Shown here: positions 26,206-64,000 of the stretch, in pieces
Layout: every line of letters begins with the position of its first letter
Position numbering within the stretch: the stretch's first letter is position 1
Assembly: GCF_003918875.1 (NCBI RefSeq)
Contig: NW_025767309.1
Coordinates: 558,001-622,000 of the forward strand
Reading direction: 5' to 3'
DNA from: Haliotis rubra
Lineage: Eukaryota
DNA length: 64,000 bases
Translations under genes and position numbers: made by a program
Notes under the pieces: generated by a model
Databases searched by the model: none
Told to the model about the DNA's origin: nothing
Seen by the model: the letters and a program-made list of their open reading frames with translations, nothing else

Positions 26206-27486
26206 CTAACCTAGAGGCAGAGGTGACCACTTCGTTACTCAACCACCAATCTGAATTTAGATAACAGGTATGTCATGTTGAAGACAGCTAACAACTCATT
26301 GAAGATAAACCCTGTGGGCATGGCACTTGAAGACTAACTTGATATGGTAGAGGTCATATCAAACTGACCTGTACAGCATTTGTGCAGCCAGTGAACAGTG
26401 TGCAGGTGTGAAACAGCTGCAGTCTTGTACACGACACATGTAATATCCTGTCAGCAGGAAATATGTGGGATGATAGCTGCCACACATGAGGCCCATGACA
26501 CACCCTGGACAATGAGTCCAAACAGATGCTGATTTTGAGCAGCTCAAACTAAAAATATCCAACCAAAACTATGAGAACTCTATCTCAAACTGTTTGATAA
26601 GAAACATACATGACCAAAATGACACTGGGGTTTGATCAAAGGCTTCCCCAGTGGTAGCTAGGCTAACCATCTTCATCTTCATTACGGTATAAAGGAGATA
26701 TATTAAATAAAAACTTCTTAATATGTGTTAAATGGTCAAACAGAATGTACATTTTCAGTTACTAAAAAGTGATATTATTGTTGTCTATAAAACAAATGAC
26801 AACTGCCCAAATCCCACCAGCAGTGCATTAGATAAATGTTAAATAGTCAAATACAGTATATAATTACCCATAGAAAAAAGTCCTATGTGATTTTATTGTT
26901 ATCTATAAAAAACAACAGACAACTGCCCAAATCCTACCACCAGCTCATATGCCTATTAAAATCCCAGCTAAGGTGTTTTGACGTCGATAATTAAATTAAA
27001 ATTTATCTTGGGAACTCTCTGTTTTACTGGTTACTGATAATGTGAAAAGTGTTTGTGTGTCAGTTTTACTAGGTAATCATGGATGTGTTTCATTGGACTT
27101 ATGTTTATTTTCAATCATTAATGATCATTCAAAGGTTAATCTAGGGTTTACAAATGGGTTATGTGACAAAAAACTGTTTCAGGATAGAAAATAGAAATAT
27201 GGTGCACATTCCTTCATAAATCATAAAGTGACAGGTATAGATGAGTGCTATATTATCAGTTTTATGTCAGTATCTTTTGTTAAACTATTGTCTGTCTATT
27301 TATTCGTTTATGTGTGACCCTCTCTCTCATGTACAGTAGTCAATGGCAAAATTATGTGTGTTTTGGGACAACAGTAGTAGAGTGCTTATTGCTAGCTAAA
27401 TGTCAGTCACTATTATACATCTCTATATCAATGAAGTACCACTTTTAAAACCACCCATAGCTAGCCCACATGTTATGTTTGGGATT

Positions 27487-27683
27487 TGTGGAAGTTCGCT
27501 GGCTGAGTGGGTTAGATGGCTGACTTTGTGTGCTGGCGATTTGGTGCCTGACTCTGAGGATTCAAATCCCAGATTGGACTCAACCCAATAAAAGTACTAG
27601 AATCTGTACTTTAGTCAGAAAATGTAATCCCAAACATAACATGAGTTACATTTGATCACTTTCTAAATGGCACTGTGTATTCA
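27487..27683 (-). mobile_element. Diverged solo copy of the 295-bp element
   Basis: Reverse-complement homology to 60930-61130 (gctgagtgggttag...gcctgactctgagg...aaagtactagaat...ttctaaatggca). Confidence 0.8.
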
Positions 27684-28719
27684 AACGGGCTATGTGACAA
27701 AAAGCTGTTTCAGCTCAGAAAATAGGAATGTGATGTACATTCTTTCATAAATTATAAAGTGACAGGTATTATCAGTATTATTATCTGTGCAGTATTATCA
27801 GTTTTATGTCATTATCTTTTGTTCAACAATTGTCTGTCTCAAACTGTTATCATGTATTAAATTTATCTTAGAAGAATATAGTCGCTTTTGTACCATGGTA
27901 TAGATTAAGACTAAAGACACTTTCGCCTGAACTATTTTTAACGTTAAAGCACTCGGATGCAAGCGTCTTCGTGACTTTAACTATAATAGTTCAGGGCGAA
28001 AGTGTGCTTTATTACACTGTACATGGTGGTAGAGCGAACTGTATTTCTTAAATGTGTGTCTCTCTTACATGCAGTAGTCAATGGCAAAATGTAAGCTGAT
28101 GTATAAAAGACAGTAAACACTTGAGGGGGATAGTGATAGTCTATTGCAACATTCTATTGCGACCAAATATTGCAATACTATTGGATTAGTCTTTTTCTCT
28201 TTGAATTGTCTCAGTTTTAGTCTCTTTTACTAACTGACAAGAAACTTGAAACCCAGATCAAGTAAACAGTTAAAACAAACTTATTTTTATATACAATTTC
28301 AAACTCCAAGATGCATGCTGTGTTTGCCGCCATGTTTGTTTAAGAGGTAACAGGGGTGAATAACTAAAGATCTGGTACTTCCTGTATTTTGTGCTGCGCA
28401 TTTATCAACGGAAGACAATTACTAAACTATGGATAGTCACACATACTATCAGTGCATCAATATTTTTTCATTTCTACCATCGATTGATTGCAATCAGAGA
28501 CTCAACAACTGCAATCCATCGATAGTTCAATGAATCATTACAGCCCTGGTACACATGTGGTGCTTTGGGTTAATTCCCCCCACCACCCCCAAAGTGTTAC
28601 TTAACTAAACCACAGGGGCTTGTAATGCAAAAAAAACTGACCCAGTCAGTGATAATACATACCTTGATGCCAGATTTTTTTCTGTTACAAGCCCTGTGAA
28701 CTAAACAGTAAACTATTTA

Positions 28720-59798: not shown

Positions 59799-60929
59799 TG
59801 GAACCAGATAATGTGAAACGTTTGTTCTTTTGGCTTTTGTAATTTGTCGTTTTCTTCATTGGTTGCCTTTTTACCAGAAAGCATAGATCTCTTCAACGTT
59901 AATGTCATTTCAGTTTTGACATGACGGATGATGTTTAATGTCTTTTTCTTGTTTTTGACACTGTGTACACAGAAATCACTGGCATGTGTGAACGTACACA
60001 AAATCGTTGAGGAATGGCATGGAATTATTTTGATGAGAATTCATATATTGTACACATTCTTATTAACACGGACATATTTAATGCCTCATTTATAGAAAGA
60101 AATAATAGAATGATAAACCAAGAAAATAATTTTGAGTTGTTTTCACCAGAGCATGTGGTATTTATATCAGTGCTGTACTTGTTAATGTCGGAATGTGACA
60201 CACTGACAGATTGTTACATGGTGAAATGAAAACGTCCTCGTGGTAGACTGCGACGTTGTGGTCAGTACTGTTGTCGTCGCAGCCATTTAAATGTACACGG
60301 ATGGTATAAAGTATTATTTACCACCAACCCCAACGCCACACTCACGACACAAAGTCATGGTCATCATAACCCACATGCGTACAATGTGTGAAGCCCATTT
60401 CTGGTGTCCCCACAGTCGTCATCTTGCTGGAATATTGCTAATAGCAGCGTAAAACTAAACTCACTCACTCGATCATCATCACCATCCCGTTACCACCACA
60501 AGCTGAACAACTAACCTCAACTCGGCATCACCTCCAAACTCAGCATCGCCACACCACTACTACATGAACAGTACTCATACCATCATCATCAACAACAACA
60601 ACAACAACATCATCATCAACAACATATCACTACCACTACGCTAACAACACCCAGCAACCTTGTCATCACCAACAGGACGACTATACTATGATCAATTACA
60701 AGGACCTGCGTCACCGCCACGTCGTCACCGCCTTAATATAACAAATATTCAATGTCAAATATGAGTCCACAACTCATCAAGAGTGCAACATACCCCCACA
60801 TGTATATTAGGAACTCGTAAACCAACTGGAATACCCAGTACATATATATGTGTCTTTCAAATCGACGCTGAACACTAAATACTCAATGACTATATGAGCT
60901 CATGCATATAGCAGAACACTACACCATGA

Positions 60930-61766
60930 TGATTACACAATGCCATTTAGAAAGTGGTCAAATGCAACATGTGTTATATTTGGGATTACACTTTCTTAGT
61001 AAAGTACAAATTCTAGTACTTTTTGAGTTGAGTCCCATCCGGGATTCGAACTCACACCCTCAGAGTCAGGCACCCAATCGCCAGCACACAAAGTCAGCCG
61101 CCTAACCCACTCAGCTACCGCGACTTCCACAAAAATGGAAGTCGGACAACTATTAGTCTAGACTGCGGGCTTTGTGTACCCTCTGATAAGTGTTAATTGG
61201 CACGGCTCCCACGGCCGAAAGCTATGATTACACAATGCCATTTAGAAAGTGGTCAAATGCAACATGTGTTATATTTGGGATTACACTTTCTTAGTAAAGT
61301 ACAAATTCTAGTACTTTTTGAGTTGAGTCCCATCCGGGATTCGAACTCACACCCTCAGAGTCAGGCACCTAATCGCCAGCACACAAAGTCAGCCGCCTAA
61401 CCCACTCAGCTACCGCGACTTCCACAAAATGGAAGTCGGACAACTATTAGTCTAGACTGCGGGCTTTGTGTACCCCTCTGATAAGTGTTAATTGGCACGG
61501 CTCCCACGGCCGAAAGCTATGATTACACAATGCCATTTAGAAAGTGGTCAAATGCAACATGTGTTATATTTGGGATTACACTTTCTTAGTAAAGTACAAA
61601 TTCTAGTACTTTTTGAGTTGAGTCCCATCCGGGATTCGAACTCACACCCTCAGAGTCAGGCACCCAATCGCCAGCACACAAAGTCAGCCGCCTAACCCAC
61701 TCAGCTACCGCGACTTCCACAAAAATGGAAGTCGGACAACTGGTAGTCTAGACTAGACTAGACTAG
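60930..61766 (+). mobile_element. Tandem array of a 295-bp retro-element unit (2.8 copies) with hammerhead-like junction motif and antisense tRNA-like A/B boxes
   Basis: Near-identical units 60930-61224, 61225-61519 and 61520-~61753. (TAGAC)n tail; 13-bp TSD ACTACACCATGAT at 60918-60930 and 61767-61779. Confidence 0.8.
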
Positions 61767-64000
61767 ACTACACCATGATATCTGTCTTTCAGCTTAACCA
61801 GTTATATGTATTCAAGTGCTGGAAAGAATATATGCCCCTATCTGGATGTAACACACTGACTTTGACTACCTTAGGGAAGGACAAATAGAAACAATGTTTC
61901 AGTGAATCAGTTTATTGTTTAGTTTGAATATTTTTTCTCACCGCGATTTGTGTTTGTAGGAGTCCAATGAACACACTATTTTGATAATAAATTATCTAAA
62001 CAGCCATGTGTTTATAATCTCACCCTCTCGTACAAAGGACATACTCCCCATGAACCGAATCTATATGTTTTCATGGCCTGATTTGGCGGAAGGTTGCTGT
62101 CAAAAGGTTGTGCACTTTGAGCTTACATTGTTTTCCATAGTTGTGATGATGACATGTTTATAAACATGCCACATCACCAGGGCTCAACCCACACAAAGCT
62201 CCTTTAGAGCTAAATAGCTTGGGCCCCATACTTTACCATAGTCACCAACCAGCAGTCTCTCTACCCTCGTATAGCAGCGCGGAGGAAAATATGTTTTCTC
62301 TTTATAAAACGGGAGTGAGTGAGTGAGTGTGGTTTTACGCCATTTTTCGCAGTATACAATCAATATCACGGCGGGGGACACCAGAAACAGACTTCACACA
62401 TTGTACCTAGGTGGGGAGTCGAACCCGGGTCTTCAACCTGACGAGCGGACGCTTTTACAATAAGGCTACCCAGCGGCCTGCAAGTAATAGAGTCTGAAAA
62501 CACAAGTGATGCATACTGTGATCAACTTCAATAAAACTAAAAGCTGAATATTGTTCGTACGGTATAATTACAAAAGTTAGAAACATGAAAATATCGTGAT
62601 ACATTAAATATTCGCAGAAGAAAACGAATTGTTTTTATTCTCTCTCTCTGGTTGTACGTGCTTTGTGAAAATGACCTAAATTGGAAACGGCTCGTTGCCC
62701 TGCCAACGTGACCTCTCTCAAGGCCCCGACAATATCTTTACATGAGTGTGAATGTGTCATCAGTTCGTAACTGTCGGATGTTACAAATTGTGTCAGATTA
62801 TGTCCAACAGGTTGGGCGAGTTCAGTGGTGACTTCTTACAACTTTACAATAATACTCTTTACGGAATCTATAACAATACGCAAGCAATTGGAAATGATTA
62901 ACTTCGTGCCAAAACGTGCAAATGGTAATCTTTTGAAAACTAGCACGGTATAAGTTAGCCTTGCTCCAAGGCTTTACTGAATGCTAAACCCATGGATGTA
63001 TAGTAATTCTATCCTTCGAAGAGGCAATAGATAAGATAAGCGGACCCCAGCCTGTATTTATGATTTTTAATAGAAATTTTCATTTAAACTAGTAATTATT
63101 ACCTTAGAGACTTGAGCAAGTCAAGGTATAAGTGTACACACTAACACAGTCCGCACCCCCTTTATGTGCAATAGCAGGTCCCGTAGACTGGCGACAATGA
63201 AACAAGTTTGCCCCGGTCCTATGTCAACATGATCTGTCCGGATGGGGCGCGGTACTGTTTACGTGAGCTGGATCCTGTCTCTCATATCGCAATATAACCG
63301 ACTCTTAGCTTTGGCGCAGGTTGACGCGCGCAAAGGGAGCTGGGAACCAGCATAATTATTAAACGTCAACAGGCAATGGTGACGTCATTTGAACTTTATT
63401 GTGAGCAGGTGCCTTCTGGGAACCCACTAATGAAGATTGTACGGTCAGAGTTAGGTTTGTTTGTTTGAGGGTTGACTGTGTACTTTTCCCCCTGTTCATT
63501 TTGACGTGTAAATCGAAAAACCCATATGCAAACTGTATAACCAACGGGGCCTGTTATAACCCCGATAGAATCTCGAATGGCTGTGTCAATGGCTTATTTC
63601 TATGCTCATTCGTTTAGCCACCGGTTTGAATACACATGACTCGTTTATTTACACAACCCCGTGATATGGTTGAAATGTTTTTGACTGCATTGATAAAAAG
63701 ACAAGTAGGCCTACGCAACGTACGCTTCAACAAAGATACATACACTGTACCATTCCGTGGGCTATTACGTATGCCACGACCCCTAAGTCAGGTAACACCC
63801 GTCTATGTCAGATACATGACATCCATCCGATGGCCAAGGGCAACCCTCCGACCAGGGTCAAGGCGACCTCAGGTTGCGGTGTCAACTTCTCAGGTCAGTG
63901 CCGGATAATCCGTATATCCGTAACTCTACTCATGGATGACCGATCAGTTGTGGGTCAGTCGGCACGCTAGTTCCGTATAACCCACATATGGTTATATGAC

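What the first reader, a model, noticed from the sequence alone, without database searches (positions are those of the whole stretch)
60918..61779. Retrozyme-like tandem element: 295-nt units joined by an atypical hammerhead-like motif, with an antisense Pol III cassette
Seen: 2.8 near-identical 295-bp units with a (TAGAC)n tail and a 13-bp TSD, so the array inserted recently as a multimer. Each junction (61168-61239; 61462-61534) reads GGCTTTGTGTA-ccct-CTGATAA-[hairpin GTGTTA/TGGCAC][hairpin GGCT/GGCC]-GAAAGCTA^TGAT-TACACAATGCC. This has a CUGA...GAAA core, a palindromic AGCU in place of helix III, and an enclosing helix I. The array's 5' end (60930) and the independent solo copy's 5' end (27683) both fall at the predicted cleavage site. 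The opposite strand has tRNA-like A (TAGCTGAGTGG) and B (GAGTTCGAATC) boxes. Known: minimal type I hammerheads with a palindromic short helix III act as dimers in Penelope-like elements and in small tandem non-LTR retrozymes that yield circular RNAs. Atypical here: C3-A8 instead of C3-G8, two hairpins in the helix II position, and mismatches next to the core. It is therefore either a new variant or degenerate.
Basis: partly seen in the sequence, partly recalled or inferred. Interest (0 to 1): 0.82.

Follow-up and report, generated by a model that had tools for sequence, protein, structure and literature searches.

The report
Abalone tRNA-SINE inserted as Penelope-style multimers
The triple 295-bp repeat is a real, recently inserted multi-copy of a tRNA-derived jumping element. 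Its insertion scars match those of Penelope-like retroelements, and the proposed hammerhead ribozyme lies on the wrong strand and fails every test I could run.

Summary
There are 2.8 units of 295 bp, a 13-bp target-site duplication (TSD) and a tRNA-like A/B-box module on the minus strand. The family has at least 4,600 candidate places in this 1.38-Gb abalone genome.

The hammerhead reading is not supported:
- Rfam finds no ribozyme on either strand at E up to 10.
- The core is CUGAUAA in all 81 junction copies examined; none reads CUGAUGA.
- Helix II is replaced by two hairpins, and helix I is set 4 nt away from the core on each side.
- The motif is antisense to the RNA that was copied.

About 45 independent arrays fix the strand. 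The end at TGATTACAC (unit position q1), or at about q28-43, is the constant end. The other end is variable and has no tail. Eighteen of 19 inverted pairs have one outer end at q1 and the other at q28-76 (mostly q31-43). TSDs of 10-16 bp enclose whole pairs. This combination of 5' truncation, tandem copies, an adjacent inverted copy and a ~33-nt "tail" on one side is the published signature of Penelope-like elements (PLEs). An autonomous RT/GIY-YIG PLE family in the same genome shows it too.

The element is therefore a Pol III-type tRNA-SINE, sense on the window's minus strand, most likely mobilised by a PLE. It resembles a retrozyme in size and tandem layout but has no detectable hammerhead. 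The partner PLE and the RNA itself were not found. Two earlier first-reader notes of this scan describe the same family on other DNA.

The parts
60918..60930 (.). Left copy of the 13-bp target-site duplication ACTACACCATGAT
   Evidence: The longest flank match is 13 bp, against a maximum of 9 in 300 mismatched flank pairs.
60930..61754 (-). Array of 2.8 units of 295 bp. The sense strand is the minus strand (tRNA sense). Its 3' end with the 'tail' is at 60930 and its 5'-truncated end is at 61754.
   Evidence: TRF, BLAST of the unit and family-wide end statistics.
60930..60962 (-). Terminal ~33-nt 'tail' segment (unit q1-33). It is present at one outer end of each insertion and absent from the other outer end of nearly all inverted pairs.
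   Evidence: 26 of 26 tail ends read ...GGCATTGTGTAATCA|flank. Tail-less ends fall at q28-43.
61030..61124 (-). tRNA-Thr-like head of unit 1, with A box TAGCTGAGTGG and B box GAGTTCGAATC
   Evidence: ARAGORN. The Rfam tRNA model gives no hit at E up to 10, so it is tRNA-derived and degenerate.
61325..61419 (-). tRNA-like head of unit 2
61620..61714 (-). tRNA-like head of unit 3
61131..61135 (-). T5 run in tRNA sense, a Pol III terminator-like site directly upstream of the next tRNA head. It is the loop of the inverted repeat CGACTTCCA/TGGAAGTCG. The equivalent runs are at 61426-61429 (T4) and 61721-61725 (T5).
   Evidence: Sequence. In 51 units the run is T4 in 14, T5 in 35 and T6 in 2.
61136..61224 (-). 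Spacer of about 91 nt between the SINE 3' end and the next tRNA head. Its 3' half is a degenerate inverted copy of the first ~45 nt of the tRNA head.
   Evidence: 28 of 44 positions identical, score 32 against a shuffle mean of 18.1 (sd 3.4). The spacer is absent from the old copy at 27485-27683.
61168..61239 (+). Hammerhead-like string (CUGAUAA ... GAAAGCUA). It was tested and not supported as a ribozyme. The second copy is at 61462-61534.
61754..61766 (.). Extra TAGAC repeats at the variable (5'-truncated, tRNA-sense) end. They extend the unit's own TAGTCTAGAC.
   Evidence: None of the other array ends examined has them.
61767..61779 (.). Right copy of the TSD
27465..27683 (+). Old copy of the same SINE family (84% identical to the unit), here in tRNA sense on the plus strand. 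It is an inverted pair: a short arm at about 27465-27484 (unit q37-55, inverted) and a main arm at 27485-27683 (unit q204-1).
   Evidence: A search with this copy found at least 4,628 candidate places.

Best explanation
The array is one recent insertion of a tRNA-derived SINE whose sense strand is the window's minus strand.

Each 295-nt unit reads, in that sense: a ~91-nt spacer ending in a T4-5 run, a tRNA-like head with A and B boxes, a ~100-nt body, and a 3' end ...GGCAUUGUGUAAUCA.

Inferred mechanism:
1. RNA polymerase III transcribes the tRNA-sense strand.
2. A Penelope-like element's reverse transcriptase/GIY-YIG endonuclease copies that RNA by target-primed reverse transcription.
3. Synthesis starts either exactly at ...AAUCA (the end with the 33-nt 'tail') or about 33 nt upstream at ...UGCA/UACA. 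The primer has 1-4 nt of microhomology with the nicked target.
4. Synthesis runs through one to more than seven unit lengths and stops at a variable point.
5. Often both nicks of the staggered cut prime. This gives two arrays head to head inside one 10-16-bp TSD.

Shown: the anatomy of the unit, the strand of the template, the two classes of 3' end, the TSDs, the single-event nature of inverted pairs, and the same signature in an autonomous PLE family of this genome.

Inferred: Pol III transcription, PLE as the mobiliser, and how the template becomes longer than one unit. The options are read-through of arrays, a template jump between the base-paired ends of a unit-length transcript, or a circular RNA.

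The plus-strand hammerhead-like string is a by-product of the unit's rod-like self-complementarity.
For: - Family size: at least 4,632 candidate places, with 144 matches scored.
- End statistics on about 45 arrays: free ends lie at q1-5 or q28-43. The other end falls anywhere from q29 to q295 and has no tail.
- Inverted pairs: 18 of 19 abut by their variable ends, with one outer end at q1-2 and the other at q28-76 (mostly q31-43).
- TSDs: 19 of 30 whole insertions, inverted pairs included, have TSDs of 10-16 bp. The null maximum is 9.
- Tail ends: 26 of 26 read ...GTGTAATCA|. Tail-less ends overlap the TSD by 2-4 nt at CA sites.
- Published signature: 5' truncation, partial tandems, an adjacent inverted 5'-truncated copy and a 30-40-bp tail at one end only (PMC8557442).
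- Internal control: an RVT_1 + GIY-YIG family has 3' ends at 1935 or about 1989, variable 5' ends and inverted neighbours.
- A and B boxes and ARAGORN tRNA calls lie on the minus strand, and a T4-6 run precedes each head.
- The unit-length tRNA-sense RNA folds at -111.1 kcal/mol, z -6.4.
- In contigs of three organism labels, loose ends cluster at q1 and q37-43.
Against: - No partner PLE with a shared 3' end was found. The one PLE family examined targets (TA)n, which the SINE does not. It shares only a 14-nt word, AAATGGCATT[C/G]TGT (p about 0.02).
- No RNA-seq run holding the element was found, so transcription, strand and RNA ends are untested.
- The tRNA-like head is degenerate and gives no Rfam tRNA hit.
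- Twin priming and template switching also occur with LINEs, so the PLE assignment rests on the combination of signatures and not on an enzyme link.
- The window's own copy has a pentamer repeat at its variable end, which the model explains only as slippage.
Confidence: 0.72

Rival explanations
1. The plus strand is the functional RNA. An atypical type I hammerhead at each junction, acting as a dimer, cuts after 61224/61519 and yields ~295-nt linear and then circular RNAs. These are reverse-transcribed as multimers, that is, a non-LTR retrozyme.
For: - The unit size, tandem layout, low GC and long TSD match animal non-LTR retrozymes (PMC7229834).
- Array ends coincide with the predicted cut.
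- The unit folds as a rod on the plus strand too (z -5.5).
- A palindromic AGCU sits where helix III would be.
Against: - No hammerhead family is hit at E up to 10 on the array or on the junction alone.
- CUGAUAA is invariant in 81 copies, so catalytic G8 is missing and C3 has no partner.
- Two hairpins replace helix II, and there is a 4x4 internal loop between the core and helix I.
- The junction fold has z -0.55.
- The q1 end is the constant, target-joined end on both sides of inverted pairs within one TSD. That marks it as an RNA 3' end on the other strand.
- A second class of ends at q28-43 has no predicted cleavage site.
Confidence: 0.04
2. An ordinary LINE-dependent tRNA-SINE. A LINE reverse transcriptase (for example an RTE or CR1 type) recognises the 3' end. 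Multimers come from template switching, and inversions come from twin priming.
For: - tRNA head, body and defined 3' end.
- TSDs of 10-16 bp and 5' truncation.
- Twin priming is known for L1 (my own knowledge).
Against: - There is no A-rich or microsatellite 3' tail.
- The end alternates systematically between the tailed and tail-less form by ~33 nt, with one of each in 18 of 19 pairs.
- About half of the insertions are inverted pairs and multimers are very frequent. These are PLE hallmarks and are reproduced by the autonomous PLE of this genome.
- No LINE partner was looked for, so this reading is not excluded.
Confidence: 0.12
3. A retrozyme analogue without a hammerhead. The tRNA-sense multimeric or unit-length RNA is cut at ...AAUCA^UAGC by an unrecognised ribozyme or a cellular RNase. 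It is circularised by a tRNA ligase and copied by rolling-circle reverse transcription.
For: - The tailed 3' end is exact to the nucleotide in 26 of 26 cases.
- Arrays reach more than 7 units.
- The fold is rod-like, z -6.3 linear and -6.2 circular.
- The transcript termini would lie in a ~50-bp panhandle.
Against: - No known ribozyme family is detected on that strand.
- An apparent excess of 5' ends at the same site proved to be a BLAST-splitting artefact.
- The autonomous PLE also has exact tail ends without any need for a circle.
Confidence: 0.1
4. Assembly artefact, or amplification of a satellite at the DNA level.
For: The units are near-identical (98-100%).
Against: - More than 40 dispersed loci carry arrays with different copy numbers and truncation points, and each has its own TSD.
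- Contigs from other runs carry the unit junctions.
Confidence: 0.02

Closest known systems
Animal non-LTR retrozymes (Cervera and de la Pena 2020, PMC7229834). A 2026 preprint (10.64898/2026.07.22.740005) argues that they are non-autonomous derivatives of Penelope-like elements.
   Same: Tandem units of about 300 bp, from dimers to large multimers. No coding capacity and low GC. TSDs longer than 4 bp where present. A presumed dependence on PLE machinery. A highly self-paired unit RNA.
   Different: Retrozymes are defined by a type I hammerhead in every repeat, and none is detectable here on either strand. This element carries a tRNA-type internal Pol III promoter and a T-run terminator instead. 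No circular RNA has been shown.
Schistosoma Sm-alpha / Sj-alpha SINE-like elements (Ferbeyre et al. 1998; Laha et al. 2000). This is from my own knowledge; the papers are not held in the library.
   Same: A repeat of about 330 bp with a tRNA-like Pol III promoter. It is found both dispersed and in tandem in a lophotrochozoan genome and is classed with PLE-type hammerhead elements.
   Different: Sm-alpha has a canonical, active hammerhead in the same sense as the tRNA head. Here the only hammerhead-like string is antisense and lacks G8.
Penelope-like elements and their non-autonomous derivatives, such as MRC1 of Chlamydomonas (Craig et al. 2021, PMC8557442)
   Same: 5' truncation, head-to-tail multicopy insertions, an adjacent inverted 5'-truncated copy, and a 30-40-bp tail at one end only. 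Some clades (Naiad, Chlamys) lack hammerheads.
   Different: The element encodes no RT or EN. It has a tRNA-derived head. Sequence similarity to an autonomous PLE 3' end was not established. The PLE family examined inserts into (TA)n, which the SINE does not.
Classical tRNA-derived SINEs of molluscs (Matetovici et al. 2016, PMC4758252)
   Same: A tRNA-derived head with A and B boxes, a body, variable-size TSDs and thousands of copies.
   Different: The described Haliotis SINEs end in short tandem repeats such as (CACCT)n and are taken to be LINE-dependent. This family has an exact tail-less 3' end, two alternative end points, inverted twin arms and multimers.

Membership tests
Hammerhead ribozyme, type I (canonical or PLE-type minimal) | Conserved core C3 U4 G5 A6 N7 G8 A9 ... 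G12 A13 A14 | tested here: not met
   The string reads CUGAUAA, with A at position 8, in 81 of 81 junction copies. None has CUGAUGA. No CTGA.GA occurs on either strand of the unit.
Hammerhead ribozyme, type I (canonical or PLE-type minimal) | A single helix II closed by the G10.1-C11.1 pair directly between the two core strands | tested here: not met
   Two separate hairpins (GUGUU/GGCAC and GGCU/GGCC) lie between CUGAUAA and GAAA.
Hammerhead ribozyme, type I (canonical or PLE-type minimal) | Helix I starts next to the cleavage site and next to C3 | tested here: not met
   The 10-of-11-bp helix GGCUUUGUGUA/UACACAAUGCC is separated from the core by CCCU and UGAU.
Hammerhead ribozyme, type I (canonical or PLE-type minimal) | Match to Rfam hammerhead covariance models | tested here: not met
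   No hammerhead family is hit at E up to 10 on 60800-61900 or on 61150-61250, either strand.
Hammerhead ribozyme, type I (canonical or PLE-type minimal) | Self-cleavage of monomer or dimer transcripts | not testable with these tools
   Needs in vitro transcription.
Non-LTR retrozyme | Tandem repeats of about 170-400 bp, dispersed in the genome, with TSDs | tested here: met
Non-LTR retrozyme | A type I hammerhead in every repeat | tested here: not met
   See the hammerhead rows above.
Non-LTR retrozyme | Expression as a small circular RNA | tested here: inconclusive
   No RNA-seq run holding the element was found. Only contigs were available.
PLE-mobilised (non-autonomous Penelope-like) element | Constant 3' end, variable 5' truncation and head-to-tail partial tandems | tested here: met
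PLE-mobilised (non-autonomous Penelope-like) element | An inverted 5'-truncated copy adjacent at the 5' side, within the same insertion | tested here: met
   19 inverted pairs, with TSDs enclosing the whole pair.
PLE-mobilised (non-autonomous Penelope-like) element | A 30-40-bp tail at one end only | tested here: met
   One outer end lies at q1 and the other at q28-76 (mostly q31-43) in 18 of 19 pairs. The autonomous PLE of this genome has the analogous ~52-nt tail.
PLE-mobilised (non-autonomous Penelope-like) element | Sequence similarity of the 3' end to an autonomous PLE | tested here: inconclusive
   Only one PLE family and L058 could be examined. The best shared word is 14 nt (p about 0.02).
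tRNA-derived SINE | tRNA-like head with A and B boxes at the 5' side of the sense strand | tested here: met
   ARAGORN tRNA-Thr-like calls in three units. A box TAGCTGAGTGG and B box GAGTTCGAATC are present. The head is degenerate, with no Rfam tRNA hit.
tRNA-derived SINE | Pol III transcription | not testable with these tools
   Only promoter boxes and a T4-6 run were seen.

The most novel reading that the evidence does not exclude
This may be a hammerhead-free counterpart of retrozymes. In this reading, a unit-length Pol III transcript of the tandem gene has its 5' and 3' ends clamped in a ~50-bp panhandle, giving a rod-like 295-nt RNA. That RNA serves a Penelope-like reverse transcriptase as an endless template, either by end-to-end template jumping or after circularisation. 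One priming event at ...AAUCA would then lay down 1 to more than 7 units. It would show that a tRNA-type promoter plus terminator can replace the ribozyme in making unit-length RNAs for PLE-dependent tandem elements, and that PLEs can drive Pol III SINEs.
Probability: 0.3. Interest if true: 0.7.

Novelty: new variant of a known kind. Interest (0 to 1): 0.5.

Why it matters
SINEs are normally treated as parasites of LINEs. Animal tandem 'retrozymes' are defined by their hammerheads. This abalone family combines a tRNA-type Pol III module with the full insertion signature of Penelope-like elements, and it has no detectable ribozyme.

If the PLE link holds, it widens the range of elements that PLEs can mobilise. 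It also shows that the hammerhead is dispensable for multimeric insertion.

The family supplies dozens of young insertions with clean TSDs. These record how PLE integration works: two primings at CA microhomologies, a tail on one side, and joining of the arms at internal inverted repeats. That process has no in vitro system yet (PMC8557442).

For annotation, hammerhead-like strings in such units should not be counted as ribozymes.

Tried and rejected
- Rfam on the whole array, on the junction alone and on five PLE loci gave no hammerhead, no other ribozyme and no tRNA.
- A genome search with RF00163 scored only 73 of about 150,000 candidates, and its controls were silent, so it is uninformative.
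- I looked for a partner in 30 GIY-YIG loci. There was no significant similarity to the unit. The repeated 15-nt hit at q36-50 is a single event in one PLE family (E 3.4). The 3'-end word match is marginal.
- I first read as showing sharp 5' ends at a Pol III start site. I withdrew this because the query's own boundary limits the alignments, and the query copy is itself an inverted pair.
- I saw an apparent hot spot of 5' ends exactly at the unit boundary (q295). Inspection showed continuing diverged units, or joints at the internal GATTACAC/GTGTAATC inverted repeat, so I withdrew it.
- T-run length variation at the unit junction is no greater than at an internal A run, so it does not show template jumping.
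- HDV-like ribozyme downstream of the tRNA-sense site: the first 7 nt (UAGCUUU) have only a 5-bp partner (AAAGC) that does not start at +1. I rejected it by eye.
- Two searches for RNA runs found no abalone RNA-seq holder. The one read-laying run had only contigs, so it gave no strand or RNA ends.
- Subfamily differences give one compensatory pair in the tRNA-like 3' hairpin (61321 with 61347). This is too little to build on and does not distinguish the strands.
Full report
**1. The observation**

- The window holds 2.8 head-to-tail units of 295 bp at 60929-61754, with 98% matches (TRF).
- A 13-bp duplication, ACTACACCATGAT, flanks them at 60918-60930 and 61767-61779.
- ARAGORN calls a tRNA-Thr-like gene on the minus strand of each unit. 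The A box (TAGCTGAGTGG) and B box (GAGTTCGAATC) are there.
- According to earlier notes of this scan, the genome is a 1.38-Gb abalone assembly.
- A search with one unit found at least 4,632 candidate places. It scored 144 matches in 40 of them, most of them arrays of 1.3 to more than 7 units.
- An assembly artefact is excluded. More than 40 loci carry arrays with different lengths and their own target-site duplications.

**2. The hammerhead reading**

- Rfam release 15 gives no hammerhead, no other self-cleaving ribozyme and no tRNA at E up to 10, on either strand. This holds for 60800-61900 and for the junction alone.
- The proposed core reads CUGAUAA. In 81 junction copies from about 40 loci it is invariant, and none reads CUGAUGA. 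The family master therefore lacks G8. G8 pairs with C3 and takes part in catalysis (established hammerhead biochemistry, my own knowledge).
- Two hairpins stand where the single helix II should be.
- The good 10-of-11-bp helix, GGCUUUGUGUA/UACACAAUGCC, is held 4 nt away from the core on each side.
- The features that mark PLE-type minimal hammerheads are a G10.1-C11.1 pair, a long helix II and a short helix I next to the core (PMC4209133). They are not met.
- The 86-nt junction folds no better than shuffled sequence (z -0.55).

**3. Which strand moved**

I numbered the unit so that q1 is the T of TGATTACAC (window 61225). I then mapped the ends of about 45 independent arrays.

- In plus-strand terms the 5' ends are fixed. 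They lie exactly at q1-2, or at q28-43, with a few at q61-76.
- The plus-strand 3' ends lie anywhere between q29 and q295 and carry no tail.
- The (TAGAC)4 of the window copy is unique to it. It extends the unit's own TAGTCTAGAC.
- About half of the insertions are two arrays in opposite orientation. They abut by their variable ends.
- In 18 of 19 such pairs, one outer end is at q1-2 and the other at q28-76 (mostly q31-43).
- Target-site duplications of 10-16 bp (mode 13-14) enclose 19 of 30 whole insertions, inverted pairs included. In 300 mismatched flank pairs the longest match was 9 bp. Each pair is therefore one event.
- In target-primed reverse transcription, the ends joined to the target are the 3' ends of the RNA.
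- The copied RNA is therefore the tRNA-sense strand, which is the window's minus strand. It has a constant 3' end and variable 5' truncation.
All 26 tailed ends read ...GGCATTGTGTAATCA|flank.
- The tail-less ends read mostly ...GTTGCA|...GTTACA| or ...ATAACA|. They overlap the duplicated target by 2-4 nt. This suggests priming at CA microhomologies.
- In contigs from three organism labels, loose ends also pile up at q1 and q37-43.

**4. What makes such insertions**

- Four traits together are the published hallmark of Penelope-like elements: strong 5' truncation, partial tandems, an adjacent inverted 5'-truncated copy, and a 30-40-bp 'tail' at one end only. Some PLE clades lack hammerheads (PMC8557442).
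- I checked this inside the same genome. A GIY-YIG search found at least 232 candidates.
- That family's 3' ends fall into two classes about 52 nt apart. One reads ...CTATGCAATAT|(AT)n and the other ...TTTTGTGCG|TATATA.
- Its 5' ends vary, and inverted partial copies lie next to the truncated ends.
- The SINE arrays reproduce this pattern with a 33-nt tail.
- That PLE family has no Rfam hammerhead within 1.5 kb of its endonuclease domain.
- It is probably not the direct partner. It inserts into (TA)n, and it shares with the SINE's 3' region only the word AAATGGCATT[C/G]TGT (p about 0.02 by shuffling).

**5. Anatomy of the unit in tRNA sense**

- The order is: a ~91-nt spacer, a T4-6 run (T5 in 35 of 51 units), the tRNA-like head, a ~100-nt body, and the 3' end.
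- The T run sits directly upstream of the next head. In a tandem array, each unit therefore looks like a complete Pol III gene with its own terminator.
- The 3' half of the spacer is a degenerate inverted copy of the first ~45 nt of the head, centred on the T run. The match is 28 of 44, score 32 against 18.1 +/- 3.4 for shuffles.
- A transcript running from just after one T run to the next would therefore have its ends paired in a long panhandle.
- That 295-nt RNA folds at -111.1 kcal/mol with z -6.4. My own runs gave z -6.3 linear and -6.2 circular. The plus strand gave -92.6 kcal/mol and z -5.5.
- The old copy in the window (27485-27683, 84% identical) covers only the head and body. It has a 20-nt inverted arm at about 27465-27484.
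- A search with the old copy found at least 4,628 candidates. Two loci had hits spaced by 92-94 nt, so the spacer is old too.

**6. Mechanism, and what remains inferred**

- Shown: the strand of the template, the two start points, the TSDs, the single-event inverted pairs, and the parallel with an autonomous PLE.
- Inferred: Pol III transcription, which rests on boxes and a T run only.
- Inferred: a PLE as the mobiliser, which rests on the signature and not on sequence.
- Inferred: the way a template longer than one unit arises. The options are read-through of weak T4-5 terminators in existing arrays, a jump of the reverse transcriptase between the paired ends of a unit-length RNA, or a circular RNA.
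- I withdrew two tempting supports after checking them. The 'sharp 5' ends at the start site' cannot be shown by that search. The excess of 5' ends at the unit boundary was an artefact of BLAST splitting and of joints at the internal GATTACAC/GTGTAATC repeat.
- No RNA data could be brought to bear.

**7. Comparison with known elements, and verdict**

- The element works like a non-autonomous PLE or retrozyme in how it inserts. It has the size and tandem habit of animal non-LTR retrozymes (PMC7229834; preprint 10.64898/2026.07.22.740005).
- It fails the defining test of a retrozyme, which is a hammerhead in each repeat.
- Its nearest analogue is the schistosome Sm-alpha element, which has a tRNA promoter plus a hammerhead (my own knowledge). 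Here there is no sense-strand ribozyme.
- The Haliotis SINEs described by Matetovici et al. end in (CACCT)n and look LINE-dependent (PMC4758252).
- I found no paper describing a hammerhead-free, tRNA-headed SINE with PLE-type insertions. I could not consult Repbase.
- I rate it a new variant of a known kind, of moderate interest.
Its link to the Penelope world should be kept.
- Two other first-reader notes of this scan (s1-320428, s1-333143) describe the same family elsewhere in this genome with the same hammerhead reading.
- At this locus, a contig of a related organism label covers both flanks at one depth. This suggests an empty site there, and hence a recent insertion (weak evidence).

Noticed in passing
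L051-L080 (e.g. L072:1-1989): An abundant, young (95-99% alike) canonical PLE family (RVT_1 plus a C-terminal GIY-YIG domain). It inserts into (TA)n microsatellites. Its 3' ends are either ...CTATGCAATAT or extended by a ~52-nt tail, and inverted 5'-truncated partners are frequent. No Rfam hammerhead lies within 1.5 kb of the endonuclease domain.
   Followed up: partly
L003:779-1138 (G000:C1079, about 360 bp upstream of a SINE array): A 28-bp minisatellite of 12.9 copies (94% matches). Its unit, TAAAGTACAGATTCTAGTACTTTGTCAG, is derived from positions q61-99 of the SINE body (the AGTAC...GTACT hairpin).
   Followed up: partly
window 27146-27352 and 27677-28090: Three blocks of a direct repeat (85-91% identity, spacing 531-738 bp) lie on both sides of the old SINE copy. 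The second copy starts right at the SINE's 3' end. This may be another repeat family or a local duplication that the SINE inserted into.
   Followed up: no
L034, L035, L036 (G000:C331); L023 and L028 (C682); L024 and L050 (C2546): Identical complex SINE insertions recur two or three times within one contig, some in opposite orientation. They were therefore carried along by segmental duplications of at least tens of kb.
   Followed up: no
TSDs of the arrays: Many TSDs begin with CA or TA and end with TG or TA (for example CAGTAAACACATATG, CATGATCGTTAGTG, CATAGGTACAATG). This hints at a nick preference that leaves ...TG-3' primers on both strands, matching the CA at both alternative element ends.
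   Followed up: partly
window 61321 and 61347 (and the equivalent positions in the other units): The window's subfamily differs from the bulk of the family by a paired change, A>G and T>C on the plus strand, which keeps a base pair in the tRNA-like 3' hairpin (A-U against G-C).
   Followed up: partly
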